A stretch of DNA of 64,000 bases from Eutreptiella sp. 'Long Island Sound 2002' (lineage: Eukaryota; Protista; Euglenida). The stretch is from assembly GCA_964036045.1 (NCBI GenBank), contig OZ038378.1:162750001-162814000 (forward strand), given 5' to 3'. Positions 4,934-29,879 of the stretch are shown here, piece after piece. How positions within the stretch are numbered: the stretch's first letter is position 1; each line of letters begins with the position of its first letter. The notes under the pieces were generated by a model. That model did no database searches. It was not told where the DNA came from and saw only the letters and a program-made list of their open reading frames with translations. The position numbers and the translations under genes are program-made.

Positions 4934-5036
4934 ATGGGGATCTCGAACTTCTTATTTATTGGCGTCGGATTGCTCTTATCGGTCTCTTGTGCGTTGTTGT
5001 TGTTCATTTCTTCTACTTCGAGGACGGACAATGAAG
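4934..5036 (+). CDS. Exon 1: N-terminal signal anchor (MGISNFLFIGVGLLLSVSCALLLFISSTSRTDNE)
   Basis: ATG at 4934, a ~20-residue hydrophobic stretch, and a phase-1 donor GAAG|GTGTGC at 5037. Confidence 0.65.
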
Positions 5037-8000
5037 GTGTGCCCATCATTTTATTGTATTCACGGAACTCGGGAGGGGAGGGACGTCAATGACCTTTCGT
5101 TGGGTTGTGCCTTTCTGCACTAGAGATGGAGGAAGTCAAGCCAGCGTGTTGTGTTATCTTATGTTTGGTTTTATGTTGTGTCAAGTTGTGTTATGTTGTG
5201 GTGTGGTGCGGTTCAATTCACACAACGTAGAAGTGGGGGGGGGGGGGGCATTTTCCACCTTTGTGTTGGGTGCCTGTGTTCACATGTCTATTGCCCATCG
5301 ATGTACTAAGTTCATGTTGTTTGCTCACCTTATGCATTTCACTGGTCTTGGTGCCTTTTTTTCTTAGGGCCGCATGAAGATGAAGATGAATCTATGAAAC
5401 GGGCTACGATTCATCATGTAACCACAGGTTTGGGTGTGGGGCACGTGGGGGCATTCTTATCCACTTGGCCAACCACATAATGTCCCCGTGGATTTGCGGA
5501 TTTCTGCGATTTCCCCCTTGCGCCCTTTTTGTGTTCATTTTCATTTGTGTATTAATGTATTCTCGTGAAGCCACTTGGAAGGACTCGTCAATGGCGCATT
5601 AAGCGTGCAAGTATCAAACGTAGCATGCGAAGAAAACCAATGCGGCACACGCCCAATATGTGTCGATACGGCCCTGAGAGCTCGTTTGCACTTCGTTGTT
5701 GTGGTTTGGAAAAATTCACCAGCATTCGTTTTGTTGTTTGAGGTCGTCGACGGCGACGGTGGAGCGCACATCGGGGGGCAATTCCATCCATGACGACCAT
5801 CCACACACCCCCACCGTCACAAGAAGGGAGCGTCCGGGATCGTGACCTCAATTATCACGTCAATGGTACAACGGCACAAGAGGGGATTATCCGGTACCAT
5901 GACGTACAATATCACATCAATGGCAGCATTACTATTAATAGTAGTACAGACCATGCCGTGCTTATACCGGCGTATTATTGCTCGGCAACACCGTTTTGTG
6001 CAAAAATGGTGGGGAGGAGGCAATGTCACAAAGACTTTGGCCTTAATTCCACGGAACGCCCATTTGCCAAGTATGTATGCATGCATCCAGTGAATCGTAG
6101 GGCGTCTCCAACCGTCCGGTGGATTTGTTTTCCGTAGTATGGTCTCGGGAAGGAGCCATGCGCGCTTTGTTACCATTGAGGCCGCAACAAGGCGAATAGG
6201 TGTTGTTGACATTACATTTGGCGTGGGGTAGGGTGGAAGGGGGCCATCGCAAGATGCGCCTAACTGGTGGGAAACGAAACGTTGTGGAATGTGCAAGTGG
6301 TGGCTGTGCTTTTGCATGCTTGCACTGTCTTGCACCACCCTCATGTGCAGGTATGCAACTGGAATTCTCATTTGCAATTATTGGCGGTTGGTGTATAGTG
6401 TCTGGGTATCTGAATGTCTTCCTCGCCTAGCGGGGATGATCCAACGAATCAGGTTGCCTTCCAACTCCGCACGTCGTTGCTTCTCGAAGGCACAGATTGA
6501 TCCAATCGCTGCGATCACGGAGTCCCGCACAAGGCACATATAGCACGAGCAATTGGTGCACGGCAGGGCGATTTCACCACAAGAGCGAGACAGCTTTTGG
6601 CCCCTGGGTGAGGCCTTGCCACTCACCCCTTGCACAACTTTTGATGGACCCCATGCCGCATGCACCAGTAGAAGCCTCAGCCCTAGAGTAACTGGAAAGC
6701 TTTGAATCAATGGTCAATGAGGTGGGTGAAGGGGACAAGGGTGCATTCTGAAACTACTCCCACCGGCATGCAAGCATGCGGCAGTCAAGGGATCAGCTTG
6801 TGTGAGGCTGTCGTCTAGTTCTTACAATTTCATATGGTGGCACAAGTGACAGTAAGAGAGGGCGCGGGCCCCTCCGGTGGTGCCACCACGCCGAAGCCTT
6901 CTGGGGTGCGCTACCACTCTTTCAATCCGTGCCTGTGCTTCCCGCTGCTGGTGTCGCCAGAGGCCAAGGATGGATCCAGTACAGAATCTGTATCAGCTTG
7001 GGCACCCGGGACAGGATCCTGTTCAGCAGCAGCAATTCATCAAGGAGATTCTGGACTGTGATATGCCAATTATTTATAAATACCTGCAGCCGTCCTTCAG
7101 GGAATTTCGGCTCGCCGTGAATACGGTGTTTGCCCGTGATCAAGCCGCTTCTGTTTGCATTATCTATCCACATATTCGTGTGTAACCCCTGGTAGCTCAC
7201 CCCGCCGTTCCGCGTGTCACGATATCTGCGCGAAGATGACGTGTGGCTACTTATCTCCCGTTTTGGAAATCAACAGTCCTTCGACAGCCCTCCCTGTCCC
7301 CAACATGCGCGCTGTGCCGCAATACTTGACTTCTCCAAGCACCACAGCCGGGTTCCAACATTCTGCAATACAAGGGGAGCAGTTGCCAACCTTTCCTTTC
7401 GTGTGCTTTTTTTTTTTTAGCCCCCTTTGAGGTTTTGGACAGCATGGCTGTTGTGTCATCGGTGCGCTTGCGGGCGAAGCACCGTTCCCCGTTTCGTACT
7501 TGGTCTTTTAGGGCATTGGTGGAACAATACAATGCGTACATCATTGTGCCTGGGTTATATTATGCGTATCAGGTACTTTCGTTTGCGGTGGGGTGTGTCC
7601 CCAAGGGTGTCCCTCTTTCTGTGTCTCCGTCGCCGAGCACTGCGCCTGTGCATGTCCCCGTTTTGGGCGATTCCCGTCCGGGCGTGTGTGCACGCATTGT
7701 GTGTGTCCCCAATGGCGCGCGTGTGCTTCTTCGGTTGCAGCTGCGTACAGCCTTCTGTGGCACTGGTAAGGAGCCACGGGTTAAGGGTTGCAGTCTTTCT
7801 CAGTCTGGCACCTGTGCTGTGTTGAATGTTGCTGTCGAACTGCGCTTTTCATGAATCGATCCGCTCGGGAGCATCACACTCATTGGATCTCCTCCTGCTT
7901 TCCTCCTCTGGAGATTCTGTCTGGCCAAACGACCGTTGGGTGTGTCATTTGCAATCTTTTGTGTGCAGTATTTGGTGGAGGTCTTTGATATGCCGGAGCG

Positions 8001-11000: not shown

Positions 11001-14000
11001 AATCCCTCCGATGACCACTAGGTTGGCCTCAGCTAAGCTTTGGCCATCGTTTGGTGACGATACGAGTACCCCCCTACCCTGGGCCAACTGGTGCACTTTG
11101 GGGCGGGGTTAGGGACCCCCCCCCTATTTGGGGTCGGGAAACACCAAAAAAAAAGTGTTAGAATGCATTTCAAAGGTCTACATTGGGTAATTGCCCCCAT
11201 AAAGATGTGAGAAGGGCCACAATAGGCTAAAAATAGGGTATGACATCACAGCTGCCAAAATCTGAACAAATGGACTAAAAATAGCCCCATTTCCCCTAGC
11301 CATAGTCTTTATAGGCCGTAATAATGCACATTGAACCATTTTAGTGAGGGAAAATGTACAACACAATCCCACTTTATGTATTTTGAGTGGATAAAAGGGT
11401 TGGAATGGATATTTCTCATTATAAAGAGCGATTTTTAGTATTTTTGTTGGGATCCTGATTGTAGTGATGCCATACCCTATTTTTAGAAACTATGAGCCCT
11501 TCACTTGGGCAAATACCCTCTAAAAACAATCCAATTCACTTCTAAAACATGATTTTTCGTGTTTCCCGACCCCAAAATAGGGAGGAGGGCCCCTAACCCC
11601 GCCCCAAAGTGCACTGGTTGGCCCAGGGTAAGGGGGCGGGGGGGTCGCCGTATACACCATGTAGATTACCACACACCCTCTCCGCTTAAATCTAGCCACC
11701 AAGCAAGAAAGCAAGCAACAAGCAAGCATGCAAGCACTTCTCCATTCTGTTTTGGCTATTGCTCCGTTCCAACGCTTTGGGCTTTACTCTACTCTAGCCA
11801 TCCTAGAGCCTAGGTGGTGCCCTTGCCGAATCCAAGTTTTGAGCCAAAAACTCACCGGTGGCGCCCCGGGGTGGGGGCGCCACATTGGGAGGTGCCCTCC
11901 CAAAAGTGCGCATTTTGTGCCACAAAACAGCCTTTTTTTGGCCCAAAGCGGCCCCAAAACCCGGTCAAACCGGACAAACGAAGGGAAACAGTGGCTACAC
12001 TTCACATACCCCTTGATTACCCCGTGACAAAGTGCCCTTTGTAGCTCTCTAACTCCGCAAAATGTCCGAGGAACGGCCCAAAAACGGTTAATAATGGCCC
12101 AAGATGTGCGCACTTTGTGTCAAATAGAGCCAAAACCAAGAACGGGCTGTATCTTGGGCCACGTGGCTCAAATCAGAAATCCGAGGGCACATAGTCCACC
12201 CGCAACCCCCCATCTTTTTGTGGTTTCCAAGCCTTAGAATCGCCCGGAAACACTTGGACCCCCGTACCGCTGGTCGCTTGGTGGAGCCATAGGGCAGCCC
12301 GGGCCGTGCATGGTGGGGGCCAACGGTGGGTCCACCAGGGTCCCCGGGGCGAAAAACATGATTTTTTCCAGGGTCGTTCCTTGACCACCTAGGGTGCTCA
12401 AACAAGTGTTTTTAGCCCGTTTTGAGCTCGTGGTGATGTGTTTTAGCCCATTAAAAATCCCAAAATGCCTTGAAAATGGGCCGTTTTGGGACCAAAAATG
12501 GGTCAAAAATGGGTCAAAAGTGTGCCCCAAAGTTATCTTGGACCATTTGGGATGCTCAAACAAGTGTTTTTAGCCCGTTTTGAGCCCCTGGTGACGCGTT
12601 TTGGGCCATGGAAAATCCCAAAATGCCTGAAAAACGGACCGTTTTGGGACCAAAAATGGGTCAAAAAACGGGTCAAAAACACATTTTTCCAACAGTGATC
12701 TGGGACCGTTTGGGGTCCAGAAACAAGTGAATTGAGCCCATTTTGAGCCCGTTTTGACCCAGTTTAGCCCCTTCCGCCACATATATACACCAAGTTGTAC
12801 ACTTCGCACCTATCTTAGAGTCGTATTGTGGACCCACCTAGAGTTGGGGAGAGGGGTGTAGATTAGAGGATATGTATATATCCTCTAATCTTCACCCCTC
12901 TCCCCAACTCTAGGTGGCTCCACAATATGGCTCTAAGATAGGTGCGAAGTGTACAACTTGGTGCATACATGTGGCGGAAGGGGCTAAACCGGGTCAAAAT
13001 GGGCTCAAAATGGGCTCATTTCACTTGTTTGTGCTTCCCAAACAGTCTAAGATAACTTTCGGAAAAACGGTTTTTGACCCATTTTTGGACCCATTTTTAA
13101 GGCATTTTGGGATTTTCCATGGCCCAAAACGCGTCACCAGGGGCTTAGAACGGGCTAAAAACACTTGTTTGAGCATCCCAAATGGTCCAAGATAGCTTTG
13201 GGGAAAACACGTTGTTGACCCCTTTTTGGTCTCAAACGGCCCGTTTTCAAGGCAATTTGGGATTTTTAATGGGCTAAAACACGTCACCACGAGCTCAAAA
13301 CGGGCTAAAAACACTTGTTTGAGCATCTGAGGTGGTCAAGGAACGACCCTGGAAAAAATCATGTTTTTCGCCCCGGGGACCCTGGTGGACCCACCGTGTG
13401 GCCCCCACCATGCACGGCCCGGGCTGCCCTATGGCTCCACCAAGCGACCAGCGGTACGGGGGTCCAAGTGTTTCCGGGCGATTCTAAGGCTTGGAAACCA
13501 CAAAAAGATGGGGGGTTGCGGGTGGACTATGTGCCCTCGGATTTCTGATTTGAGCCACGTGGCCCAAGATACAGCCCGTTCTTGGTTTTGGCTCTATTTG
13601 ACACAAAGTGCGCACATCTTGGGCCATTATTAACCGTTTTTGGGCCGTTCCTCGGACATTTTGCGGAGTTAGAGAGCTACAAAGGGCACTTTGTCACGGG
13701 GTAATCAAGGGGTATGTGAAGTGTAGCCACTGTTTCCCTTCGTTTGTCCGGTTTGACCGGGTTTTGGGGCCGCTTTGGGCCAAAAAAAGGCTGTTTTGTG
13801 GCACAAAATGCGCACTTTTGGGAGGGCACCTCCCAATGTGGCGCCCCCACCCCGGGGCGCCACCGGTGAGTTTTTGGCTCAAAACTTGGATTCGGCAAGG
13901 GCACCACCTAGGCTCTAGGATGGCTAGAGTAGAGTAAAGCCCAAAGCGTTGGAACGGAGCAATAGCCAAGACGGGATGGAGAAGTGCTTGCATGCTTGCT

Positions 14001-15784: not shown

Positions 15785-18700
15785 CACGGACTGTGCAGCA
15801 CGGATGACCAGGGAGACCACACAGTGGGTGTTGTGCTCCCAGAACAGTGCCACACACCCAGAACACCCAGTGCATTCCTCAGCTAGTGGTGCTCTTCTCC
15901 CTGTGCCATTTGTGCAGATCGTCCACAGCAGTCGAAACGTTTCAGAGTGACGTATGCAGAGACAATTGACCTCCTGATGCCCATTAATCACAGTATCGGC
16001 CTCAAGCAATTGCATGTCGCAGTGCCCCACATGGAAATTGTGTCCGTAAGATTGGATCATTTGCCAGTGAAGCAGCAAATTGAGCTTCTGGCAGACACAG
16101 GTTTGTGCCAGCACCCCCCCCCCCACCCACCACCATGTGTTTGTGAAGAATCAGGGGCCACATTTCCGCATGGTGTAGTTCCAAGTGCCTCCACACTCCG
16201 GACCACATTTGTGGATTGGGCTGTGGCTCGGTTGGAGCCCCACACCCCGACATGCAAACCCCCTTCAGTATTGCAACCTTTGTGATCGCACACATATCAT
16301 GCCCTGAGTGTTGTCCCTTTGTGACGAAGCAGGGGCCACGTGTCCCCAATCTGTCACATAGCAGGGACCAAACTTCCACACAATGTGTGAGGAGCAGGGA
16401 CCAAACTTCCACACAATGTGTGAGGAGCAGGGGCCACACTCCACACAATGTGTGAGGAGCAGGGGCCACACTCCACACAATGTGTGAGGAGCAGGGGCCA
16501 CACTCCACACAATGCGTGAGGTGGCAGGGGCCACACTCCACACAATGTGTGAGGAGCAGGGGCCACACTCCACACAATGTGTGAGGTGGCAGGAATCACA
16601 TTTCCGCACCATGTGCGAGGTGGCAGGGAACACGTTTCCACGCAATGTGTATGGGGACAATGCCAAACAGTGTGTGAGGGAGGGAGGAGGAACAATGCCA
16701 CACAATGTGTGAGGGAGCAGCGACCACACTTCCATGCAATGTCTGAGGGAGTCTGAGGGAGCAGGGACAATGCGTTGGTGCATTTTCCTGCTTACCCCAC
16801 CCCCTACCCCAGGGCTTCTTTAGAATAATTAAAAACCAAGGGGGGGGGAGCCCTCCCCCAAAACCCCCTCCTCCCCTCCCCCCCCCCTGCTCAAAAGAAG
16901 CCCTGCCCTATCCCCAACCTCATCCTACTTTTTGCGTTTTCTGGTTCTTTAGTAGACAAAGGCCTAAGTTGTATCTTGCTTCTATCCACTCCCTGAGCAG
17001 TACTTATTTCCTTTCTCCACCTCTCAGTTCCAAGTCCCCTCGTGTTTTTAGGCAGAATGGTTTCTAACACTGAATTTGAATCGGATGGCACCAATTCATT
17101 TAGCCCTGACAAGAAGCCGCAGTGTGTGTTTGGGCAAAGGTGGGGCTGGTGCCAAGCATCGCACCATGTTGGTGAACTCGACTGTGGCACATTTTCCAAA
17201 CAAACCCCTCTAGGAACACGAGAACTGGCAAAACAACCCATTTGTGTCGTGTTCCTCAGGTAGGGAGCCTGTGGTACACCAAACAAAGAGTTTTGTGGAC
17301 ACACATCTCGGTAGAAGGTGCCATTATTGAAGGCAAGGGTCCTTTGACTCGTGGGGGCTGTGGTCTGCCGACCCAAGCCCAGTGCCTAGAGCCTTCGGTG
17401 ACACGGCCTGTGATGCTCTTGTTCTCTGCACCGCAATCAATGTTGCCGCAGATGTCCTCGTGGCCCCCAAAGGGGACCCTCTGTACAGTCTGGTGCATTT
17501 GCGCGAGGGGGCAACGGTGATCGAGGCCATTAGCCGCCCGTACCCGTACTACAACGAGACGTTAGTGTTCCTGGATCCCGCCGCGCTGTGCCGTGCTCTG
17601 GGTCTAAAGTACAGGCAATACTTTCTGACGCACGTTGGGCAGGCCTGGGAGCAGCCAGCACCGAATGCCACCCATCTCGCGCTTCTCCTGGAGGAGGCGT
17701 ATACCTCACACAAGGTCTCCCTTTTCCTCCAGTCTGCTGTTTCCAAGGGGCTCCAACCGCCCGATCCGTCCGCCTCACGACATCACTGAGCAACCCCAGG
17801 GGCAATGCAGGGGTCTCATAAACCATCCCCATCCAACCTCTTGACCCCCCCACCTCTTCATGCAGCAGACGCTTGCGGGGCTGCAGGGGGACTGAGCTGC
17901 AGGGAGAATGGAAATGTGTGCTTCCAGGGCCAGATTTCTTTGCATGTCTGCTTCACCCAGAGTTTTCGCCGGTGTCCGAGAATGTCTGCAGTGCCCGTGA
18001 GTTTCTGCCTCAAGTTTCTCCCCTTCGGGTACTGACCAAGATTCAGCACCACCAGCGGAGGAGACATGCCCCCCCCCCCCCCGCTAGAATGTTGGGGTTT
18101 ACCAGGGTGCCGGACAAAGCTGACCTGAGGGAGGGTCGCAGGGAGGCTAGAGCATGATATGCCGTGCATTGCACGGTATCATGTGGCGTTGTGCTCAGCA
18201 GGGCGGACATGCACCGATGCTTTGCCACATTTCTGTTAGACTTCGCCATTTGTGCAATGGCTCGAATGGCTTATGGCCTCCCACCTTCAAGTAGTCAGGA
18301 AACCATTGCCCATCACCTTCGGCTCAATCCCAAATTAAAGCGCAAACCAAATCAAATCAGTTCAAAGAAATTGTGATCTGCGGTCGGGCTCATCCAGCTT
18401 TCATCCACCCGCACCCTCTCCCCATGCCCCGTGTGCCACCAACCGATGATCAGAGACGTCAGATGCGGGAAAGGACCGCATGTCATTTCAAGTACTGGTG
18501 CGCATGCAACATCGCAACGCAAGCCCATCGCAAACGGCAGGGGATGGCAGGAGGACTCAACAGCAAGGCACAGCACACCCAACACCCTGGGCTTCTGTTG
18601 TGTGAACCTTTTTTTTGATGGAGGTTTGGTTCAGTGTTCGCGGCAATGCACTATCAGAACAAAAACTCTTGCAAGCCAATGGACTTAGCAGCTGTGGGCT

Positions 18701-21700
18701 GAAGGCAGATTAGGAGCTGTGGGCAGGCTGTTGTAGTACATCTGTGAGTCCAATGCCCTGGTACATGCTATTCTTGAAAATGATGAATTTAATGAGGAGA
18801 ATGCTGATCAGGATATCATGCGTTTGTATGGGGACGTTAGGAACAACAATGCCATGCCCCCCCACAGAAAGTTGAGCTGATTGAGTCTGTATCAGATTCT
18901 GATGTAGAGTTGCAAGATGTGGAATCTGAGTTACTGGAACACGTGGAATCAGAAGCACTATCCAAACTAGCGTGTAGCAACAAAAGCAGGTCACACAACA
19001 GACATGGCACTGGACACCTCGATGGGTACCGCCCGGCACTGAGCAGCCTTGCGCTTGGAATTCCGCTTCCCTCCTCCCTTCCTGAGTTGCAGAGTGTGGT
19101 ACACTCAGGCGGGGGAGACAGTCTCGGTAGGCAGGCTTTCCCCTGAGTTGGGCCTTGGTTTGGATTTGGGCTGCAATGGAGCCCTTCAGAGGTAGATTGC
19201 GTTTTAGACCCTGAGTGGCTAGCGCAGCTAAGGATCACCAATGCCATTTGAAGTCTCTGAAGAACTTGCCTGCAAAAAAATCTGAGCACAACGGAATGTC
19301 GCGCAAAGTGGGTGCACAACTAAGGTCACGTATGGAACTTGAAGTCTTCAAAGAAGTTGCAGGCAAAATCAGATCACAACTACTCACCATCTGGAATGTC
19401 ATGCCAGGTGGGTGCACAACGTAGTTGATGACATCCATGGAATGTAGAGTGTGGCCTTGTTTGTGAAATTATGAAAGATGGCCAGAAACGACTGGGGACC
19501 GATGTGCCTGTGGACATAACTACTGCAAGAAATAGCACAGTGACTAAATTTGGCCTCCGAAAGAAGAGCCTAATTCCAATAGGGGTGGTTGGACACTGGC
19601 GCTCTAACCCCCCACCCCCCCTTTTCGGAGAAGTTTTCCTCCGGCCTCGGAAGAGCCATGTCCCACCAGGCCTTGGGAACAATTCTTGGTTCCTAATGCT
19701 ATTTGAAAAACAAGCTGTACTGCTGCACCCTTGTCTTTTGGTACATGCAGAGGGTTGTCGAGCACCGTGGTGCGTTGTGCGGTGTCCTTGCGAGCCACGC
19801 AAACAGGGCATGTGTTGCACAAGGAAGCAAGCACATGGCTACCAAAACCACTGCTCAAAACAAACTTCTGCCGGAGACCGCATCCCTTCGGTGCACAAGA
19901 TGGGGAACAGCAAATGGTCCGCTGTCCATGGTAACATGTGTGCCTGTCACGTGTAAGCGCGGCATTGTCTAAGCAGAGGATCCCTGTCTGCCCCTAGTTT
20001 CCGCTGACCAGGGCTGTGCAAGGGGGCATCGGACTCATTGACCATGGCCATCTCTCTGCCAGAGACTCACAGATAGACCCAAACGACTTGCTTTTTCCAG
20101 GGGCATCGGCAAGACAACTCCCAAGCAGCGCCTGTGCGATTTTTGTCGCCGCAGACTCTTGGGTGTGAAGGCGTCAAGCTGTGGTCCACGCCCATCAAAT
20201 TCGGAGGTTGGGGGGATGGCCATTCCAAAAATGGCTGGTGGAAACGCGTCTGGATCGTGAGCCCAGGCGTGGCCAAGGTCCCGTTCAGGTGTGCATGTGC
20301 TTTCATGACCCCTCAAGTGGGTCGCGTGCGCATTGTTTTCGAACGGCCGAGGCTGCTCGACCCCATTTCGGGAGGGGTTTGGGCGTGTCCTCCAGCACTG
20401 GCAAGAAAGTCCGTCCGAGACCAACCCCCCTCCACGGGGGGGGGGGGGCGGCCGGGCTCGGTCCTTGTATGCGACCCCCCCCCCCCCCCCGAGTTTTGAA
20501 AGATAGCGGTGCAGGGGCCATGGCGCCAACGGCGCCAACTTTTTTGTTGCATGCTTAATTGAAGGGGGTACTATGCCTTTAGTCCTTAAGACCCTTAAGA
20601 CTTTCTTCCTGGCAAAGACGAGAAATCGCTCTCATCGCATACATGACCCCCCCCCCCCCCCACAAGTTTTGACAGATAGCTGGGCGGTGGGTCGCATCAG
20701 GACCGTGCCCCCCTTCCCCCCTCCCCCGTGCATGCCTGGACATGCAGCGCACCGCTGATGGGCAACACCTGGTGATCTGGAACCCCCTGGCCCTGTAGGC
20801 ACTGTGCGCGTCCATAGTAGTGGAGAGCAGCCTTCGGATTTCGCGGTGATGAGAACGATTGCATGTGACGCCTGCCGGTGGATCCCCTTTCCTGAGTTGC
20901 GGAGTGTGGCGGACTCAGGCGGGGCTGACGGTCTCGGTAGGCAGGCTTTCCCCAGAGTTGGGCCCTCGTTTGGATTTTGGCCGCAGTCGAGCTTCTCGGG
21001 CCCGAAGCGAAACTTTCTCTTCAGTTGCTTATGCTGTAGTGCTGCCTGGTGCCAGTCATACAGCACCAATTCTGATTCGGAAGAGTCTGCTGGAGGGCTG
21101 CATAGACCAAATCCTCGGAACAAATTTGCCATAGCAATGGAATCGCCGTGCGCCACTGTGTGGGCAAACGCCGAGCTGCCACCCACTGGTAGCACTCGTC
21201 CTCGGAGCGGCTGCCCGGGCGAGTGATAGTGCTCCAGTACGATACTAATGCCCAAGCAATGCCCTCCTGGACCAATGTTTTTTTGTTTTAAATTGTCCGC
21301 AGGGCCAAGTTTTAACTGGCAGCTCATGGCCCCCCGGTCGGTTGCGTGTTGAGTTATTGTATCAAGCTTTGGTGGCCAAAAATCTGCGGTTGGGGTGCGG
21401 TAGGGTAAGCCCCCAAAAGGAAGGAATGCCAAGGAAGGCGACTGCAGCGCCTTACAAAACGGGCGGTCCCATGACCCGGAGTGGCAAGGTATGGTCCATG
21501 GTACTGCCCCAAAGTGTCCCGCGTGTTGGTGATGCCAGGGGTACCCCGGGCCATTCGCACACACCCCCTCCCAGGCGTTCGCGAGCCCTGTCACGCCCAC
21601 CCTGAGGCCCATTGCGACGAGCCAACCCCCCATCCAACCCAGGCACGGCTCGGTTGTGCCAGTGTTCCCGTTGCAAGCGATGCGTACCGCTTTCGATTCC

Positions 21701-24700
21701 CCATCCGCACGAACACTGACGCACGATCTGGTGCCATGGTGTCCGTCCCGACCATGACTCGATCGGAAGCATCGGCCGGACCAATGTTATTGCTACGCCG
21801 CCGGATGCAATGAGTGCCCCAGTCTGCAAGCGCAACGGCCTGTAGGTGTCCATTCTGGTTCGTGTTTCCAATGGAGATAGGCTGAGAGCCACGCCTCCTC
21901 CTCCTCCTCCTCCTCCTCCTCCTCCTCCTCTTCCTCCTCCTTTGCAAGCCTGTTTTGGTGCAGACGTGGCAAGGCCACCATACCCGCCCTGCCCTGCATT
22001 GTATTGCACGACCAGAAGGCATTACAGCCCCCATCCGTTGCGGATGTCCGTCCTCGTGCATGCGCAACCCCCAAAGGCCCGTGCTGCCGCCTGCTCGGCT
22101 CCATTCGTATTAGGATTGGGTGGTCACCATAAAAGTGGTTGCCACTCAACATGCCGGGAGTGAGCCTTGGGAGGGGTGGTATCAAAAGGGTCAAATAAGA
22201 TGGGCGCAACGTAGACTGCACACGCATACCCTACACACACCCAACAATCCTTCCACATGCCATCCTCCCGTGTAAACCCCGCGACCCGCAGCCCTGCCCG
22301 ACACCCGCTCCCCTGTCCAGGGCCAGCAGCAGCTATTGGGTTCGCATGTGGCGTGAAATCGAGGCAATCCGCAACTTTACAAACCCTTTCACCGCGAAAC
22401 TGCTCGGGTTGTGCAGTGACAGTGTACGGAACAAGTACCTGTTCATGCAGGAGTCGCTGCCGGGGGATATGGATGTATGTTTCTGCTACGCGCAGTGCTG
22501 GTCTTCCAGTTTTCCGGTCAGCATGTTGTTGCTGATGCAGACGTCCCTGCTGCAGCTGCTCGTTTGATGGTTGTTGCCTGACGCTTGGCATAGCCCTCGC
22601 ACATGCCAATGCCCAAGCTAAGCTGGCAGCTTGACCCAGCAAGGCCCACAGGTGTTGGGTTTAGGCGAAGCGGAGGAGGGCGTCGCAACACACTTCGGGA
22701 CGTCTGATAGAGCAGGCATCTCCCGCTGACTGTACCCTCCGTTCACACACCCCAAGGCCCCGTCCTCCCCCTAATTTTCAGGGAGCCAGGAGGCTCTGCA
22801 GACTGCACACGAGCCACAAAGCAGCTTGCATGAGGTGTTCTCACAGCTTTTCGAACCTGAGCATTCATGCCTTGAATGATTTGGAGCGTGTTGGCGATCA
22901 GTTGTGCATTGTGGGTTGCCCTCCCCTGAAGGCCCCATGAGACCAGACCACCCTACCCAGCAGGGTGCCAAGGGAGACGGGTATGGAAGCCGAAACCTGG
23001 ATTCACCCAAGGTCAAATGGTGTGATAGAAGCCTTGCCGCACCACCCAACGCAGCTGGCAGTGCCAAACTCAGGGGGTGCAACCGGTGCGGACTTCTGGG
23101 GCGAGCATGAGAACAGGTCAATCATGCGTACATGCGGGGGAAACAGTAAATGATGGGCACCTGCTCGACAGAGTGATCTGCCTATGACTCGAAATGGAGA
23201 CGTGCAGACTACAATTTTTGATACTGTTTAGGGCTTACGGAATGCAATGTGCGGTACTGGGCAAGAACTTGGAGAGACGTTGGTGCATATGCAAGATGTT
23301 GTGCCACCGGAAGAAGGGGTTCTTCACAGGACCAGCTGGCCAATGGGCCTATTGGCACGCACAGCTGTCACCATGGCACCAGCTTCTGTGTTTTATGCCA
23401 ATGTTACTCTGCACGTTTGAGTTGTGCAAGTGGTCTAGCACAACGCCGGAGAGCATTTTTGGTCTGGGTAACCCACAGCTTTGTCCAACGACCACCCGCT
23501 GGTCGCTATAAAATGTCTAACGACCGAGGGGAAGTGGCGTAATGCGGCGAAACATCGTTGGCCGTTGCGCGAGAGAGGGGGCGGGGGGGGGGATGCATCT
23601 CGCCCGTCTGCAACCCCAACCCCCGAACCCGATACGGCTATCGTTTGGCCATAGGTACCTATCGTTCGGCCATGGGTACCTATCGTTCGGCCATGGGTAC
23701 CTATCATTTGGGCATAGTTACCTAGCCTTTGGGCATAGGTACCTATCCTTTGGGCATAGGTACCTGTCCTTTGGGCATAGGTACCTATCGTTGGGCCAGA
23801 GGTACGTATTGTTTCGGCATCGATAACTATCGTTTGGGCACAGGTACCTATCGTGTGGCCATAGGTACCTATCATTTGGGCATAGTTACCTATCGTTTGT
23901 GCATAGGTACCTATCGTTTGGGCATAGGTACCTATCGTTTGGGCATAGGTACCTATTGTTTGGGCATAGGGTAGGGTTTATGTATCCTCGCCGCCTTGGG
24001 GACCCTCAAACGGCAGGGGTGATGCGGCCATGTATCTTGAAACAATGCCAAAACATGCACAACACCCAAGCACAAGACAGACATGTGACAGGGTCGTTCC
24101 AGTGTCCTCCACAGCTATGCCAAATCCAAGGCACCAAGTGCGCGAGCAACAGCCAAGACAATGTTTGGGCTCCAGTTTTGGGCTCCAGTTTTGGGCTCCA
24201 GACCCCCCCCCCCTTGAGGAGATCTGTGGGCGCAGGTTTTGGTTGACCTTTTCCCCATAGGCTCTTCCCGCGCCTCACTGCTGCATTCCGCTCCTCTCCC
24301 TTCCTGGCCGCGCTCTTCAGGCCCTTACAAACAACACCTTTGTAAATGCACTGTCTGGCTATCTGCATCTTTGGCCAACTCAAAAGCAGGTACCTATCTC
24401 TCATGTATTGAAGTGAAGTGACCAAGCACCTCGGAGGACACCTTGGATCCGCCCCCCCCCAGCCAGGGATGCATTGGAAGGGGGGGGGTACCCCCCCCCC
24501 CCCCTCGAGGGCGCCCAGTCTATGCCCAGCTGGTGTCTCCCTGACGCCGAGTGCCGGCTTCAATGGCATTTGTAGCCGACAGTATCCGCCCCCAACCGCT
24601 TTGGCAGCCTTCTCCAATCGCCTGTGTGACCGCGTCTATGGCCGCCTCTGAGGCCCCTTCCCTTCTAATGCATCCCTGCCCCCAGCCCCCGTCGCCTTGC

Positions 24701-27700
24701 CCACATGCGGTATTGTTCAGCATCAGCCGTCCACAATACAGAAGGTTCCATGCACAAAACTTGAACAACTATGGCATCCTGGAACCATCAGCCATTCCAT
24801 TTTTCCTGGCCTAAATCCTTCATCCCCCCGCCTTTCTTCCGCGTACTTGGATGGGCACAGAGAAGAGGATCTGCAGGAGAGAGTGTGCCTCCGCCACCAA
24901 GGGCCCCCAGCCTTTGGGGCAGGTGCTATCCGTATGGGGCAGCGGCACCACTGCCATGCCCAGCGCCAGGGCGGTCCTGAAGGAACCCACCCCCAGGGAC
25001 CACCAAGCGCCAAACACCAACCGCCACCAACCGCCAATCGCCAATCGCCACCAACCGCCAAACACCAACCGCCACCAACCGCCAATCGCCAATCGCCACC
25101 AACCGCCAAACACCAACCGCCACCAACCGCCAATCGCCAATCGCCACCAACCGCCAAACACCAACCGCCACCAACCGCCAATCGCCAATCGCCACCAAGC
25201 GCCAACCGTCAACCGCCACCAACCGCCAATCGCCAATCGCCACCAACCGCCAACCGTCAACCGCCACCAACCGCCAATCGCCAATCGCCATCAACCATGG
25301 TTGAACATATGCGCTGCACGCGGTCTTTTTGCAAAACTGCCGTTGCGGAACGCCTTTTTTCCCCCTCTCTTGAGGACCGCCCTGCCTAGTGCTGCACATT
25401 TAGAGCTGCGATGAGTGTGATGACCTCCGCAAGCCTCACCAGTCTGAACGCCTACAAGCGGATCCCGTCCTGCGGTGTGGCGGCTCCGCCCCGACCTCTT
25501 GCATGATGTGTCGGACTGTGCGCCACCGCCCGTGTCCGTTCAACACGTTGGCACACACCCGGACATCCGCAGCTGTTGTGCGAACTTTGATGGCCGTGAC
25601 TGCGTGTGGGTGAGCGCAGACACTCCACTTTGCCCAGTGTCCCCAGTGCCCCCATTGAGGACCATGAACGGACATGGCGGGGCGCGTGTGCGTACCCAAG
25701 GGCTTGGGTGTACTTCACTGCCTCCGGCAAGGGCCGTGGTGGTTCTCAGCCCCGAGTCCAGCGCGGGGCAGCCTGAGACGAGTTGATTGGCCTGTCGAGT
25801 GCCCCCGTACGCAGGTGGCGCATCAGTGGACGTCGATATGGTGCTGGGCACACTCCTGACCCATCCTCTCGTCTTTTAATTCGGCGGAACGTCTTTGGGT
25901 TGGGGCGGATCCTTCCTCCGCCATGCGTGGGCCCAAATGCCGCTGTGCGCAGGGGCGTGTCGCGTGCGCTGCACAGCTGCGACCTGTGCTCATGGAGTGC
26001 GACTGGGCACCGGTCGAGCGCCGCACAAATGGTCCGGGCACCGCCCGCGCGTTGTACTGCGCTGCCGCGCGTGGAGACGGTGGGGCGTTCCCCCGCAGCG
26101 GTACAGCGGCAGTGCCGGAGGACGGGCGGTGGGTAGTTTGGTGCAGCGGTTCACTGGTGGTACACTGTCGAGCACAACGGTGCGCGTGCAGCGCCGTACC
26201 ACACCGGAGGTGCGCCGACCATTCGGGCAGTGTACAATGGAGCTCAGCGGTGCACAGTGTACAGGGGGTGGCACGGTCACGTGCCGCGGTGTGTAGGTGG
26301 TGCATAGCCAACTGCAGCAGGGCAGGCGGCGGGACAATCCCCTGATCAGGGTCTTTTCTGAGTGTGTGTCCTACCCTACGGGGGGGGTGGGAGCCCATCA
26401 GGGGCAGACCAACCGTGAGGGGGAAAAGGACATATGGTGGACGGCCCGGACAGCGCGTGGAGGAACAGGGCACCTGGGCCTCACAGAAACACAGCGAGGC
26501 AGGCTATGGACGGCCTGTGGACAGAGGTGTGTGGACAGCAAAAACAGTCAAACGACCCTGGCAACAACCACCACATCCTCAATACGCCAACTACTGGGCG
26601 CCGCTGACACGCAAACAGCACACCATGCCACATCCAGCACAGTCCCAACACACCAACTACTGGGCGCCGCGGACGCGGAAACGACACCAGCAAGAGCACC
26701 GGCTGCAGCAGCTGACAGACAGCAGCGACTCGACGCAACATGCGAAGGGAAGAACGGGTGACTGTCCAGGGCCCTGTAAAGGAGCAACAACCAGACGGAA
26801 TGTCACACAGGGGGTGGATTCGTCAGAATTCCTGAGTGGGTGGGTTTCCAACGCCCCTCCCCCCCCCTCTCCCCGTAGGGTAGGCGATTGTGGGGGACTT
26901 TGGGTCAGCGCCAAAGGCGCTGGTTGAGGCATTTTGCCGGTGGTAAGGCATTTTTCCTGTGGTAGTTGGGTGGGTGGGTGGGTGGGTGTCCAATAGCCCC
27001 CCCCCCCCGTGGGGGGTGGGGCATTTGTGGGTTTTGCCACAAATCTGTGGTGGGTGGGTCCCTCAAATCACACCCCCCCCGCCCCCCCCCCCCCCCCGGT
27101 GGTTAAGCACAACCCCGCCCCTGATGCCGTGGCGGCCACCTCCGTGAGATGCCCTGTGCTACGGTGCGTGCCGGCAGGTCCTGTACGCCTTCTATGGCGA
27201 CGCGGGTGCCAAGAACTGGCGCTTCGCACGCGACGGGGGTCTCCGGATGTTCGACTTCGACAGCCTGTTCATAGTCCTGGCGAACACGGCCTGCGGATCG
27301 GAATCGTATTGCGGGGGTGGCGGCGGGCGGAAGACGTCCGCCTGCGTGCAGGGCCGCTGCGACCCGAAAGGTGCGTGATTGCCATACTGTAAGCGAAGGG
27401 ATGCCACCCCAGTCTAGCAACTGGAACCAGCCCCCCTCCACCTCCCCCCCTTTTCCAAGGCGCGGCATGCCCCACGTGCGTACTCGGACGGACCGCATTG
27501 ATTTTGGGGGCCTGATTGCCATTTGCTTCCAAATGTGGCGCTGCAGTGGACAATGCCGATCGAGTTGGAAGTCAGTGATTTGCTATTTGCACCGTGGTGC
27601 GTGTCTTTATGGCCATTCTGTTCGACCCTTGCGGCGTGGTCTCTTTCGTTGTTGTTGTAGTTGTTGTTGTAGTTGTTGTTGTTGTTGTTGTTATTACTGT

Positions 27701-27723
27701 TGTTGTTGTTGTTGTTGTTGTAG

Positions 27724-27757
<34 letters not shown>

Positions 27758-27836
27758 GTTGTTGTTGTTGTCATTGTTGTTGTTGTTGTTGTTGTGTTGT
27801 TTTTGTTGTTGTTGTTGTTTTTGTTGTTGTTGTTGT

Positions 27837-27914
<78 letters not shown>

Positions 27915-27947
27915 GTTTATTGTTGTTGTTGTTGTTGTTGTTGTTGG

Positions 27948-28025
<78 letters not shown>

Positions 28026-29879
28026 GGTTGTTGTGGTTGTTGTTGTTGTTGTGTTGTTTTTGTTGTTGTTGTTGTTTTTGTTGTTGTTGTTGTCATTGTT
28101 GTTGTTGTTGTTTTTGTTGTTGTTGTTGTTGTTGTTGTTGTTATTGTTGTTGTTGTTGTTGTTGTTGTGGTTGTTGTTGTTGTTGTTGTTGTGGTTGTGG
28201 TTGTTGTTTTTGTAGGTGGTGTTGTTGTTGCTGTTGTTGTCCGCCTTGTCCACGATCTCATGACACCAATGCAGAACCCGGGCGTCGGGTGCAATGGTCT
28301 CGACTGTAGTCCGCCGTCTCGCATGCGTTGTGCAAAGCTGCACATTGATATTGTTGCCGGTGGGTAGTGTTTTGCTGGGAACGGGTACGCCCCCGCCGCT
28401 GCTTACGCGTTGAACGCTCATGAATTGTCGCCTTGGTGTTCTGTTGCCCGAATGCCGGGCGCATGCGGATGTACTATTAATGGTTTTTTTTGGATTGAGC
28501 AGAATGGAAAAGATGCCGTCTCATTCGGTGTCCAGCAGTGCAGGAGGGTATCGTTGAGATCGGCCCAACGTGACGACACGAGGGAGGTTCGTCAGGGACA
28601 GCGTGCGGTAAATCAGGGGTGCTCAAGTGGACAAGAATTTTGTTTCCGTTTTCTCAGTGAAGAACACTCCAGACACCCGGTGTTTGGCGAGTGGCGGGCC
28701 ACCGCCGGCGGTTGAATGTTCAAAGACATTTGTCAGTGGTCAACCGGTCAACCGCTGGCCAACCCAATTTCTTTTTCCGTCTCGACGTCTGGCCTTGTGT
28801 GCACCGTTTGGAGACGAGGCCGCTGCGTCCGAGCGGGCGCACAAGGGCCGGCACAGTTCACTCCGTCGAGGGAGTTCGGGGAAGGGGAAGCCCCCCCCCG
28901 TATCGAGACGCGCACTGTCGCCTGGACCGTCTGGGCGTCTCCCGCGCTGGGGAGGGGGGGGGGGGCTGCCTCCAAAGCTGCTGCAACGGCGTCGTACCGA
29001 AGCCCCTTCCGTCGCCCATTCGGACCCACGGCGTTGTGCAGGGGGTCGTGGCCCCGACGGCGATTGCACCGTCCCGACCGTAGTGCCCTCACGGCAGACG
29101 GCAACGAGGCTGCCCGGGACGCCCCCACAGAGAACGGCGGAGGGGCGGCAGACCGGTGGGGGGCCGCTCCCTGAGAAACGGACGGAAGTTGAGAGGAGCG
29201 TGTGAAGAGTCGAGTCCGGGGGCACCACGGCGGACCGCCTGGGGTCGCATGCTCTGCAGGACAGACGCAATGAGGGGCAGTGCCCCCCCCGAGGCGCGTC
29301 GTTGAGACGCATTTTGTCTGATGGAAGGAAGGGAATGCCCCGGGCGTTCGTCACCCCGTCTTTGCTTTCCTTTTCTTTTTTTTGCGCTCATGAGTGCCCT
29401 CAGGCAGCGCGCAAAACAACCGCTCGACCACCGTTGGTTGCCCTCCATCCGCTTTCGGTTCGCTGTCCTACCGCCTTCGGTTACCCTCCAACCGCCGTCG
29501 GTAACCGCTCGAAGATGACTGAGTGCAAGTCACCCGCTTTGTTTTTCCCGCATGAGGGAGCGCCCTGGGAATGCCACCGTGACGGAGATGAAACGCCCTG
29601 CGCATGCGGCCCCGAGCCCAGACCCGCGGCCTGCGTTGTTCAGGGATGCTGGAGATCCAAGGCGGGTGGATGCAGACGTTTGTGCAGGAGGTGCTCCGGA
29701 AAGTGCCAGCGGAGCTCCAAGCGGTGCCTGAAGTGAAAGCGTTTCATAAGAAGGTCGTTGGTCAGCACAAGTGCAGCCGCGAAGAGCTGTCGCAGTTTGT
29801 GCAGTTCGTAGTGGGGCACACCAACATTCAACCGTCATTCAGAGGGGCCAGGCATCCGGAAGGCGAGGGCAGGGGCTGA
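4934..29879 (+). CDS. Multi-exon gene: signal anchor + GT61 glycosyltransferase + PKDCC/POMK-like kinase, about 820 aa (manual model)
   Basis: Exons: 4934-5036, 5824-6070, 6544-6607, 6961-7177, 7421-7572, 7969-8061, 8135-8299, 8999-9146, 15883-15946, 15994-16100, 17452-17714, 20155-20288, 22321-22474, 24321-24389, [25815-25840 and 26326-26350 tentative], 27178-27370, 29644-29879. All junctions are GT-AG and phase-compatible. Total 2460 nt, one open frame. Exons 3-4 and the two micro-exons are the weakest parts. Confidence 0.7.
5824..6070 (+). CDS. Exon 2, luminal N-terminal region
   Basis: Lies inside ORF 5790..6137. C-rich acceptor ...tcacaag| in phase 1 (NAGNAG alternative at 5827). Strong donor GTATGT at 6071, phase 2. 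Confidence 0.6.
6544..7177 (+). CDS. Candidate exons 3 (6544-6607) and 4 (6961-7177)
   Basis: Phases run 2-0 and 0-1. Donors GTGAGG (6608) and GTGTGT (7178). Peptides TSNWCTAGRFHHKSETAFGPW and RPRMDPVQNLY...QFIKEILDCDMPIIYKYL...YPHI. An alternative acceptor exists at 6496. No family motif is recognised. Confidence 0.45.
7421..9146 (+). CDS. GT61 domain exons 5-8 (7421-7572, 7969-8061, 8135-8299, 8999-9146)
   Basis: Spliced peptide ...PGLYYAYQ|YLVEVFDMPERQLLVM...|...LGRSLQFHRACWGPRLE|AAHYLWHGGYFIP... is colinear with POMGNT2 as I recall it (PLFYTLRQF...RLFFM...LGRLLCFSHAFVGL...WYQYGFVQP). Junctions are canonical; the 7421 acceptor has a long poly-T tract. Confidence 0.72.
9610..10680. repeat. 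Three diverged copies of a ~70-bp motif
   Basis: ca(t/c)catttggtgacaa.ggg.g.acat...tgtagcac at ~9619, ~10240 and ~10593. Confidence 0.75.
11102..11602. repeat. ~500-bp self-inverted module left of the palindrome
   Basis: gcggggttagggaccc...tatttggggtcgggaaacac (~11102) is the reverse complement of gtgtttcccgaccccaaaatagg...cccctaaccccgc (~11558-11602). An inner pair lies at ~11222/11465. Confidence 0.7.
11685..14023. mobile_element. Giant palindrome / foldback element with arms of about 1.17-1.19 kb
   Basis: Arms are reverse complements; ORFs 11728+/13694- and 11784-/13608+ give near-identical peptides. The centre is between 12875 and 12876 in gattagaggatat-gtat-atatcctctaatc. No coding homology is visible. 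Confidence 0.9.
14073..14550. repeat. ~480-bp self-inverted module right of the palindrome, related to 11102-11602
   Basis: 14073-14200 is the reverse complement of 14428-14550 (gatgtcatgccc.attttta.cccttccaa.ccctttgtaggccccaaaa). Confidence 0.7.
15097..15782. repeat. (GT)n microsatellites
   Basis: Runs near 15097-15130, 15522-15544 and 15753-15781. Confidence 0.95.
15883..17714 (+). CDS. GT61 C-terminal exons 9-11 (15883-15946, 15994-16100, 17452-17714)
   Basis: Peptide VQIVHSSRNVSD|IGLKQL...VRLDHLPVKQQIELLADT|DVLVAPKGDPLYSLVHLREGATVIE...LCRALGLKY fits the DUF563/GT61 pattern (R.I.N...EQ..L....DVLV..HG..L..L..GA.VIE..A..LGL.Y). The 16101-17451 GT-AG intron rebuilds a GAT (Asp) codon. Alternative: a single exon 15918-16100. 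Confidence 0.8.
16350..16740. repeat. 30-bp minisatellite
   Basis: Unit cacaatgtgtgaggagcaggggccacactc, about 10-12 copies, degenerating rightwards. Confidence 0.92.
16810..16905. mobile_element. 96-bp MITE with CAGGGCTTCTTT termini (hAT-like)
   Basis: TIR cagggcttcttt...aaagaagccctg. Flanks ccctaccc and ccctatcc form an 8-bp TSD with one mismatch. Confidence 0.7.
20155..24389 (+). CDS. Kinase N-lobe exons (20155-20288, 22321-22474, 24321-24389)
   Basis: TLGCEGVKLW...NGWWKRVWIVSPGVAKVPFR|ASSSYWVRMWREIEAIRNFTNPFTAKLLGLC...YLFMQESLPGDMD|ALTNNTFVNALSGYLHLWPTQKQ. Contains a Gly-loop equivalent GWWKRVW, a beta3 Lys (VAK) and an alphaC Glu (REIE). Phases 0-2, 2-0 and 0-0; donors GTGTGC, GTATGT, GTACCT. 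Confidence 0.8.
20433..20730. mobile_element. MITE-like element with CACGGGG...CCCCGTG ends
   Basis: Imperfect TIR around ggtcc.t..atgcgacc / ggtcgcat.aggacc. Related pieces at ~56200-56305 and ~57955-58083. No TSD seen. Confidence 0.6.
21896..21942. repeat. (CCT)n microsatellite
   Basis: About 15 units. Confidence 0.95.
23636..23970. repeat. 21-bp minisatellite
   Basis: Unit cataggtacctatcgtttggg, about 15 copies. It produces the spurious GHRYLSF repeat ORFs. Confidence 0.93.
24464..24678. mobile_element. 215-bp MITE with a 19-bp TIR and 7-bp TSD
   Basis: cagggatgcattggaaggg...cccttctaatgcatccctg (one mismatch). ccccagc flanks both sides (24457-24463 and 24679-24685). Confidence 0.85.
25009..25298. 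repeat. 48-bp minisatellite built from caaccgc/caatcgc heptamers
   Basis: About 6 copies of accaaccgccaccaaccgccaatcgccaatcgccaccaaccgccaaac. Confidence 0.92.
27178..27370 (+). CDS. Kinase catalytic exon
   Basis: VLYAFYGDAGAKNWRFARDGGLRMFDFDSLFIVLANTACGSESYC...CVQGRCDPK. Catalytic D...N, DFD in place of DFG, and Cys pairs like PKDCC (PC...DC...C..GWC). Bounded by cag| and |GTGCGT. Confidence 0.8.
27648..28236. repeat. ~590-bp (GTT)n microsatellite
   Basis: Near-pure GTT with occasional 1-nt slips; lies in the last intron of the GT61-kinase model. Confidence 0.98.
29644..29879 (+). CDS. Terminal exon of the kinase domain
   Basis: Acceptor gttgttcag|, phase 1, matching the previous exon. Peptide GMLEIQGGWMQTFVQEVLRK...REELSQFVQFVVGH..., stop TGA at 29877-29879. 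Confidence 0.7.

What the first reader, a model, noticed from the sequence alone, without database searches (positions are those of the whole stretch)
4934..29879. Hidden ~820-aa GT61-kinase fusion gene not visible in the ORF track
The GT61 exon can leave at AAG|GT (17715, phase 0) and join the phase-0 exon at 20155 that opens the kinase N-lobe. I found no separate signal-anchor exon for the kinase in between. One polypeptide with a GT61 transferase and a PKDCC/POMK-like kinase would couple sugar addition and phosphorylation. I do not recall this architecture being described.
Basis: partly seen in the sequence, partly recalled or inferred. Interest (0 to 1): 0.88.

Follow-up and report, generated by a model that had tools for sequence, protein, structure and literature searches.

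The report
Possible GT61–secretory kinase fusion gene
A sugar-transferase-like gene and a kinase-like gene lie head to tail and could be spliced in frame into one protein, but the only RNA evidence shows where the transferase exon ends, not what it joins, so the fusion is plausible and unproven.

Summary
The sequence facts hold. The last GT61-like exon can leave at AAG|GT (17714/17715) in phase 0. The exon at 20155 starts in phase 0 behind a good acceptor. The joined frame reads ...EEAYTSHK|TLGCEGVK... without a stop. The kinase-like gene has no start codon or membrane anchor of its own that I could find.

New evidence for the fusion: an estuary metatranscriptome holds one RNA contig identical to 17479-17714. 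It ends exactly at the proposed donor, and that run covers no unique intron or spacer sequence.

Evidence against: no read or contig shows the join 17714^20155, and no RNA covers kinase exons 1-2. The donor GTCTCC has a pyrimidine at +3, unlike nine other donors modelled here (GTGTG type, the Euglena gracilis consensus).

Family assignments are soft. GT61 and kinase identity rest on language-model neighbours and on motifs I read by eye. Pfam, PDB and a search of 1.84 billion representative proteins gave nothing on single exons. I could not submit spliced proteins.

The kinase keeps the canonical lysine and glutamate, so it is not POMK-type.

My exon chain gives about 284 aa plus about 250-300 aa, not about 820 aa.

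Fusion about 0.42; separate genes or a different join together are about as likely. The scan had already noted the kinase and the GT61/kinase/GT49 cluster on this same DNA.

The parts
4934..5036 (+). GT61-like gene, exon 1: ATG, hydrophobic signal anchor (MGISNFLFIGVGLLLSVSCALLLFI...), donor AAG|GTGTGC, leaves phase 1
   Evidence: Read from the sequence. The donor equals the E. gracilis GTGTG consensus (PMC11170887).
6853..9146 (+). Five predicted internal GT61-like exons: 6853-6950, 7027-7125, 7196-7240, 7969-8061 and 9065-9146. Phases run 1>0>0>0>0>1, and the donors are gtgtcg, gtgttt, gtgtgg, gtatcg and gtgcaa. More exons may be missing.
   Evidence: My own exon-chain search, stable at two exon penalties. 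The assembled frame is open, 284 aa. No homology support on single exons. Tentative.
17383..17714 (+). Last GT61-like coding exon up to the proposed alternative donor. The acceptor is at 17383 or 17392; both fit phase 1.
   Evidence: Atlas features: 83 of the 100 nearest clusters carry PF04577, and the top hits share 202-206 of 256 features. RNA contig of run X9, 236 nt, identical, laid on 17479-17714. Codon-use score in the 98th percentile of the window.
17715..17789 (+). Read-through tail (VSLFLQSAVSKGLQPPDPSASRHH) and stop TGA 17787-17789. In the fusion model this is the start of the intron (GTCTCC).
   Evidence: No RNA cover in X9. Codon score ambiguous.
17715..20154 (+). Proposed fusion intron of 2440 nt, or else the spacer between two genes. 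It holds high-copy repeats at about 18065-18082 and 18889-19087.
   Evidence: Depths and loose ends in the DNA runs X1 and X3. Repeat D8, 19076-19182, resembles 20886-20992. No Pfam family on minus-strand ORFs. No Rfam family.
17805..17915 (+). Rival first exon for a stand-alone kinase: ATG ORF of 37 codons in the GT61 frame, 16 nt after the TGA, ending at AAT|GTGTGC in phase 0. It has no hydrophobic segment.
   Evidence: Codon use looks non-coding (GC3 0.50, 30th percentile).
20155..20288 (+). Kinase-like exon 1: Gly-rich loop (FGGWGDGHSK) and VAK lysine. Enters in phase 0 and leaves in phase 2 at CAG|GTGTGC. An alternative phase-0 acceptor lies at 20101.
   Evidence: Lies in unique sequence in the DNA runs. 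No RNA cover in X9.
22321..22474 (+). Kinase-like exon 2: alpha-C glutamate (WREIEAIRNF), LLGLC, hinge YLFMQESLPG. Donor GAT|GTATGT in phase 0.
   Evidence: Atlas features of the enclosing ORF: the nearest named clusters are PK_Tyr_Ser-Thr / Pkinase fragments, score 0.95-0.96, about 130 shared features.
23232..23323 (+). Candidate kinase exon 3; its 3' end is unresolved. The acceptor tttag|G is in phase 0. One frame-keeping nonconventional-type intron, 23324-27161, has ACAGG at +3..+7, CCTG at -9..-6 and a 6-bp end pairing.
   Evidence: With about 5,800 combinations tried, a match this good is expected by chance about 0.35 times, so this is only a candidate.
27149..27370 (+). Kinase-like exon 4: catalytic loop YGDAGAKNW (Asp...Asn at +5), DFD in place of DFG, and four Cys in the activation segment. 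Leaves phase 1 at AAG|GTGCGT.
   Evidence: No Pfam, PDB or atlas recognition as a lone exon.
29644..29879 (+). Kinase-like last exon (enters in phase 1; G+GG = Gly), C-lobe helices, stop TGA 29877-29879
   Evidence: The only match in the protein collection is the window's own ORF.

Best explanation
A type II membrane GT61-like glycosyltransferase gene (4934-17789) is followed on the same strand by a kinase-like coding unit (20155-29879). The kinase unit has a canonical catalytic set, several activation-segment cysteines, and no start codon or anchor of its own.

The most likely single reading is that part or all of the transcripts leave the last GT61 exon at the weak donor 17714|GTCTCC. That skips the TGA at 17787. 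They then join the phase-0 acceptor at 20155 (or 20101). The result is one anchored luminal protein with a GT61-like domain followed directly by a kinase domain. Unspliced read-through to the TGA would give a stand-alone GT61 form.

Shown: the phases, the open joined frame, the lack of any other credible first exon, expression of the GT61 exon, and an RNA contig that stops at 17714.

Inferred: that 17714 is a splice donor, that its partner is 20155, that both domains are active, and any functional coupling between them.
For: - Phase-0 donor and phase-0 acceptor, and an open joined frame.
- Kinase exon 1 has a Py tract plus CAG acceptor and no in-frame ATG before exon 2, so it needs an upstream coding exon.
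- No ATG-started ORF with a membrane-grade hydrophobic segment and a phase-0 GT lies in 17715-20155. All candidate first exons have non-coding codon use.
- RNA run X9 has one contig of 236 nt, depth 3, identical to the window, laid whole on 17479-17714. It ends at the predicted donor. X9 has no cover on unique intron or spacer sequence, so it is not DNA carry-over. A random contig end on that exact base has odds of roughly 1 in 200-300.
- Four Cys in the activation segment argue for a luminal protein that needs an anchor. Only GT61 exon 1 supplies one.
- No minus-strand gene or RNA family lies in the interval.
Against: - No contig or read joins 17714 to 20155 or 20101. X9 has zero cover on kinase exons 1 and 2.
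- The contig has depth 3 and may derive from very few fragments, so its end could be a coverage end.
- The donor GTCTCC has C at +3 and C at +5. All nine other donors modelled here have a purine at +3. The E. gracilis consensus is GTGTG.
- The 20155 join leaves no linker between the two domains.
- No fused homologue, paralogue or transcript-derived protein turned up. These searches were short-exon queries under length limits, so a blank is weak.
- Nonconventional introns are common in euglenids, so an unrecognised kinase 5' exon cannot be excluded.
Confidence: 0.42

Rival explanations
1. These are two separate genes. The GT61-like mRNA reads through to the TGA at 17787. The kinase has its own 5' exon or exons that I could not recognise. 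One option is a nonconventional intron. Another is the ATG ORF 17805-17915, which ends at a consensus GTGTGC donor in phase 0 and sits 5 nt behind a C-rich ...CCCCAG that could take a spliced leader. On this reading the RNA contig ends at 17714 by chance.
For: - The 17805-17915 ORF, its consensus donor and its phase.
- The candidate acceptor CAG at 17797-17799. E. gracilis outrons use a C-rich tract plus CAG, and 57% of its introns are nonconventional (PMC11170887).
- The 17715 donor is weak.
- No RNA covers the kinase exons in the run that covers the GT61 exon.
Against: - The 17805 ORF has non-coding codon statistics and no signal peptide.
- A cysteine-rich activation segment without ER targeting is odd.
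- The exact coincidence of the RNA contig end with 17714 is left unexplained.
- The hydrophobic ORF at 18209 cannot join in frame through a GT donor.
Confidence: 0.3
2. The donor at 17714 is real but joins another, unidentified terminal exon of the GT61-like gene, either outside 16700-22650 or too short to be laid. The kinase would then be a separate unit.
For: The RNA contig ends at 17714, with nothing laid on 17715-17893, on 20155-20288 or on 22321-22474.
Against: No candidate exon was identified. It needs two unknowns: the GT61 terminal exon and the kinase 5' exon. The GT61-like domain already looks complete at 17714.
Confidence: 0.15
3. The kinase-like unit is a 5'-truncated relic with no start, and is not translated. 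The in-frame geometry with the GT61 exon is coincidence.
For: No start or anchor. No RNA cover. No Pfam or PDB recognition of any exon. No relatives in any search.
Against: Four exons keep open frames, matching phases (2>2 and 1>1), consensus splice sites and a complete catalytic motif set, with a stop at the expected end of the domain.
Confidence: 0.1

Closest known systems
POMGNT2 (GT61) and POMK acting in sequence on O-mannosyl glycans of animal alpha-dystroglycan
   Same: A GT61-family transferase and an atypical luminal kinase of the PKDCC/FAM69/POMK group, here side by side. Two GT49 (LARGE/B4GAT1 family) genes lie downstream. DxD stands in place of DFG, as in POMK's DLD (PMC5142810).
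   Different: In animals these are separate, unlinked genes. The window kinase keeps the beta-3 Lys (VAK), the alpha-C Glu and Asp...Asn spacing, whereas POMK has Ser, Gly, an MCD motif, a longer catalytic loop and Gln (PMC5142810). No sequence similarity to either animal protein was detectable. The substrate is unknown.
PKDCC/VLK and FAM69/DIPK secretory-pathway kinases
   Same: Kinase core without an APE motif, DxD metal site, several Cys just after it, a Cys shortly before the Gly-rich loop, and a need for ER targeting.
   Different: The likeness is read from motifs that I recalled from memory. No profile or structure comparison was possible on the spliced protein. There is no C-terminal extension and no signal peptide of its own.
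Conjoined genes / transcription-induced chimeras, and natural bifunctional glycan enzymes such as LARGE1 (GT8+GT49)
   Same: A cryptic donor in the last exon of the upstream gene, just before its stop, would join an internal exon of the downstream gene and keep the frame. The outcome is two catalytic domains on one anchor.
   Different: In typical chimeras the downstream gene has its own first exon, and none is evident here. I did not find a GT61-plus-kinase architecture in the literature searches. I could not query an architecture database.

Membership tests
GT61 (Pfam PF04577 Glyco_transf_61) | Profile match above the Pfam gathering score | tested here: inconclusive
   hmmscan found nothing on the last exon or on six other exons, even at E<=10. 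Only single exons could be submitted, not the spliced protein.
GT61 (Pfam PF04577 Glyco_transf_61) | Nearest neighbours by sequence features belong to the family | tested here: met
   Atlas: 83 of 100 nearest clusters carry PF04577, and the top hits share 202-206 of 256 features against a guide value of 170. The recognition score is below the guide (2169 against 2300).
GT61 (Pfam PF04577 Glyco_transf_61) | Conserved H-G-A-G-L-T-N type motif before the G-x-x-V-I-E strand (motif recalled from memory) | tested here: not met
   The exon reads DVLVAPKGDPLYSLVHLREGATVIEA. The strand motif is present, but the His/Gly-Ala-Gly part is replaced by K-G-D-P. Activity is therefore uncertain.
GT61 (Pfam PF04577 Glyco_transf_61) | Detectable homologues | tested here: not met
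   phmmer against 1.84 billion representatives returned only the window's own ORF and a spurious repeat protein. A single-sequence fold gave pLDDT 40, which is unusable.
Eukaryotic protein kinase-like fold | Gly-rich loop, beta-3 Lys, alpha-C Glu, catalytic Asp...Asn, metal-binding Asp | tested here: met
   Read from translations: FGGWGDGHSK, GVAK, WREIEAIRNF, YGDAGAKNW, MFDFD. This is motif reading only.
Eukaryotic protein kinase-like fold | Profile or structure match | tested here: inconclusive
   No Pfam or PDB hit on exons. Atlas places exon 2 among PK_Tyr_Ser-Thr fragments but does not recognise exon 4.
POMK (protein O-mannose kinase) | Displaced active site: beta-3 Ser, Lys at the start of beta-2, alpha-C Gly, MCD motif with a disulfide, longer catalytic loop, Gln as second metal ligand (PMC5142810) | tested here: not met
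   The window protein has VAK, the Glu in REIE, YGD with Asn at +5, and no Cys before the catalytic Asp. Only the DxD motif is shared.
PKDCC/VLK | Own signal peptide; family-specific Cys pattern; profile match | not testable with these tools
   No reference sequence of the family could be obtained, and the spliced protein could not be submitted. No signal peptide was found.
Fusion / conjoined transcript | Reads or cDNA spanning 17714^20155 | tested here: inconclusive
   The single read-laying run showed an RNA contig ending at 17714 but no joint. Three of the four runs were DNA.
Euglenid conventional (GT-AG) intron | 5' GTGTG-like site; Py tract plus CAG at the 3' end (PMC11170887) | tested here: inconclusive
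   The 3' end at 20155 is met. The 5' end GTCTC is not met at +3 and +5, while 9 of 9 other modelled donors fit. It does not fit the nonconventional signature CCAGG/CCTG either.

The most novel reading that the evidence does not exclude
A euglenid makes one membrane-anchored polypeptide that carries a GT61-like transferase and a canonical-site PKDCC-group luminal kinase. The gene sits directly upstream of two GT49 (LARGE/B4GAT1-family) genes. That would be a protist gene cluster, with a 'Rosetta-stone' fusion, for building a phosphorylated glycan analogous to the animal O-mannosyl matriglycan core.
Probability: 0.2. Interest if true: 0.8.

Novelty: new variant of a known kind. Interest (0 to 1): 0.55.

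Why it matters
GT61 enzymes and PKDCC/POMK-group kinases work in the same compartment. In animals one pair of them (POMGNT2 and POMK) acts on the same glycan. A natural fusion would be direct genetic evidence that such a pair works as a unit outside animals. Together with the neighbouring GT49 genes, it would point to a previously unknown phospho-glycan pathway in euglenids. If the two are merely neighbours, the locus is still a co-oriented cluster of glycan-pathway genes, but the fusion claim falls and the finding is ordinary.

Tried and rejected
- Pfam on 25 exon or ORF pieces: nothing for the GT61 or kinase exons.
- PDB sequence searches on four pieces: nothing relevant.
- phmmer against 1.84 billion representatives with the last GT61 exon: only its own ORF and P0002, a bacterial repeat protein whose match is spurious.
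- Three word-index protein searches: only the window's own ORFs, so no paralogues, retrocopies or transcript-derived proteins turned up.
- Two JGI metagenome scans: none.
- Single-sequence AlphaFold of the last exon: pLDDT 40, so no fold search was run.
- Atlas on kinase exon 4: unrecognised.
- Dinoflagellate-type and Euglena-type spliced-leader patterns, recalled from memory: absent from the window.
- Rfam and tRNA scans: none.
- ATG ORF at 18209 as a signal-peptide exon: rejected, because it has no phase-0 GT and GC3 is 0.44.
- One ORF running through the TGA with the 17916 donor: considered, but codon use after the TGA looks non-coding.
- Nonconventional-intron versions of the join (17709, 17727 or 17742 to 20139): in frame, but inconsistent with RNA identity running to 17714.
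- Runs X1, X3 and X4 turned out to be DNA (even depth, no splice joints), so they say nothing about splicing.
- I did not submit spliced protein models to any search or fold tool, because they have no reference and would have had to be typed.
Full report
**What is there.** The window is eukaryotic DNA. Its introns have GTGTG-type 5' ends: gtgtgc, gtgtcg, gtgttt, gtgtgg, gtatcg, gtgcaa, gtgtgc, gtatgt and gtgcgt. That is the consensus reported for conventional Euglena gracilis introns (PMC11170887). It fits earlier notes of this scan that call the genome a euglenid. I did not otherwise verify the organism.

**The GT61-like gene.** My own exon-chain search gave a stable, phase-consistent set of five internal exons: 6853-6950, 7027-7125, 7196-7240, 7969-8061 and 9065-9146. 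They connect exon 1 to the last exon (acceptor 17383 or 17392) as an open frame of 284 aa up to 17714, or 308 aa with the read-through tail. The middle exons are ab initio predictions, and some may be missing.

**Is it GT61?** Sequence searches on single exons are blank:
- Pfam.
- PDB.
- A full phmmer scan of 1.84 billion representatives. It returned only the window's own ORF and a spurious repeat protein.

The language-model atlas does place the last exon among GT61 clusters. 83 of 100 neighbours carry the family, and the top hits share 202-206 of 256 features. The strand motif GATVIE is present. The usual His/Gly-Ala-Gly motif before it is replaced by PKGDPLY. I call the domain GT61-like with uncertain activity.

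**The kinase-like unit.**
- Exon 1 is 20155-20288. It carries the Gly-rich loop and VAK, and its donor is CAG|GTGTGC in phase 2.
- Exon 2 is 22321-22474. The split codon AG|G gives Arg. It carries the alpha-C Glu and the hinge, and its donor is GAT|GTATGT.
- Exon 4 is 27149-27370. It carries YGDAGAKNW, DFD and four Cys.
- Exon 5 is 29644-29879. The split codon G|GG gives Gly, and the stop is at 29877.
- An exon between 22475 and 27148 is unresolved. A candidate starts at 23232. One frame-keeping intron, 23324-27161, carries the euglenid nonconventional signature, but so many combinations were tried that this is not significant.

Atlas features put exon 2 among tyrosine/serine-threonine kinase fragments. 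Exon 4 alone is not recognised. The catalytic set is canonical. The POMK structure paper (PMC5142810) defines POMK by a displaced active site: Ser for the beta-3 Lys, Gly for the alpha-C Glu, MCD, a longer catalytic loop and Gln. The window protein has none of these and shares only DxD. It is not POMK-type. The PKDCC likeness is motif-level and rests on my memory of that family.

**The proposed join.** The arithmetic is right. AAG ends at 17714 on a codon boundary. 20155 is a codon boundary behind tttttgtcgccgcag. The joined frame is open. A second phase-0 acceptor lies at 20101, but the 18 codons it would add have no coding signal.

Kinase exon 1 has no in-frame ATG. [quoted passage not shown] So exon 1 must be an internal coding exon.

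Between 17715 and 20155 I found three candidate first exons:
- An ORF starting at 18209 is the only hydrophobic ATG ORF. Every GT in it is out of phase with both strong acceptors.
- An ORF at 17805-17915 lies in the GT61 frame just after the TGA and ends at a consensus GTGTGC donor in phase 0. It has no hydrophobic segment.
- An ORF from 19471 reaches GTT|GTGCGG.

All three have non-coding codon use.

**RNA.** Of the runs that hold this DNA, X1, X3 and X4 are genomic. They show even depth over exons and non-exons, and every joint lies at a repeat. They say nothing about splicing.

X9 is an estuary metatranscriptome. It has one contig on unique sequence: 236 nt, depth 3, no mismatch, laid whole on 17479-17714. 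It has nothing on unique intron or spacer sequence, so it reflects RNA. There is no GT in the 80 nt before that point.

At such low depth, a contig ends exactly at an exon boundary if reads beyond it split between two forms and fall under the assembler's abundance threshold. A coverage end landing there by chance has odds of roughly 1 in 200-300. I take this as good but not conclusive evidence that 17714 is an exon end in RNA.

The same run has no cover on 17715-17893, 20155-20288 or 22321-22474. So neither the read-through form nor the fusion is seen. With perhaps five to nine reads in all, this absence carries little weight.

No transcript-derived protein, paralogue or retrocopy exists in the protein collections or the JGI metagenomes.

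**Weighing.**

For the fusion:
- The geometry fits.
- The kinase needs an upstream coding exon and an anchor.
- There is no credible alternative first exon.
- The RNA contig ends at the donor.

Against:
- The donor GTCTCC has a pyrimidine at +3 and no G at +5, unlike 9 of 9 local donors and the published consensus.
- The 20155 join leaves no linker.
- The join was not observed.
- More than half of E. gracilis introns are nonconventional (PMC11170887), so a hidden 5' exon is possible.

I put the fusion, as a regular product and perhaps alongside a stand-alone GT61 form, at about 0.42. Separate genes get 0.30, a different partner for 17714 gets 0.15, and a dead kinase relic gets 0.10.

**Context.** Two long single-exon ORFs downstream on the same strand carry PF13896 (GT49, 'glycosyl-transferase for dystroglycan'), at 34962-36722 and 58032-59255. 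The scan had already noted this GT61 / kinase / 2x GT49 arrangement and the kinase on this same DNA. The neighbourhood makes a shared glycan pathway plausible. It does not bear on whether the first two units are fused.

**Limits.** I had one read-laying run and two run searches. Spliced protein models could not be handed to Pfam, PDB or structure tools because they have no reference. Family calls therefore rest on single exons, language-model neighbours and motif reading.

Noticed in passing
window 34962-36722 and 58032-59255 (+): Two long uninterrupted ORFs (587 and 408 codons) match Pfam PF13896 Glyco_transf_49, the LARGE/B4GAT1 family (E 3e-26 and 1.5e-21). They are co-oriented with the GT61-like and kinase-like units. 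The first has a hydrophobic N-terminal segment.
   Followed up: partly
window 48634-49686 and 50960-51394 (+): Reverse transcriptase (RVT_1) and RNase H ORFs, a retroelement lying between the two GT49 genes.
   Followed up: no
window 17790-18032 (+): The GT61 reading frame stays open for 81 codons after its TGA. Within it, an ATG at 17805 and a consensus donor AAT|GTGTGC at 17915/17916 are in phase with kinase exon 1. A C-rich ...CCCCAG lies 5 nt before the ATG. Codon use looks non-coding, so this may be chance (roughly 1 in 15), a vestige of an older longer exon, or a real separate start.
   Followed up: partly
window 11712-12322 / 13399-14009: A perfect 611-nt inverted repeat (100% complementary, 1076 nt apart), with further nested inverted repeats inside. 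It lies in the long GT61 intron between 9146 and 17383.
   Followed up: no
window 20282-20878, 16700-17100: Very high-copy repeats. Word depth reaches 20,000-53,000 against about 12-30 for unique sequence in the DNA runs, which suggests on the order of a thousand copies. G/C homopolymer runs mark their edges.
   Followed up: no
window 23597-24033, 24952-25359, 27525-28300: Tandem arrays with periods of 21, 24 and 9 nt inside kinase introns. They create long false ORFs in all frames.
   Followed up: no
window 18837-19319 (-) and 20632-21633 (-): Related ORF-bearing repeat copies lie on the minus strand either side of kinase exon 1. The direct repeat 19076-19182 matches 20886-20992 at 86%. No Pfam family was found.
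   Followed up: partly
window 2-1147 (+): An ORF running in from the left edge has a DUF1963 match (E 1e-6).
   Followed up: no
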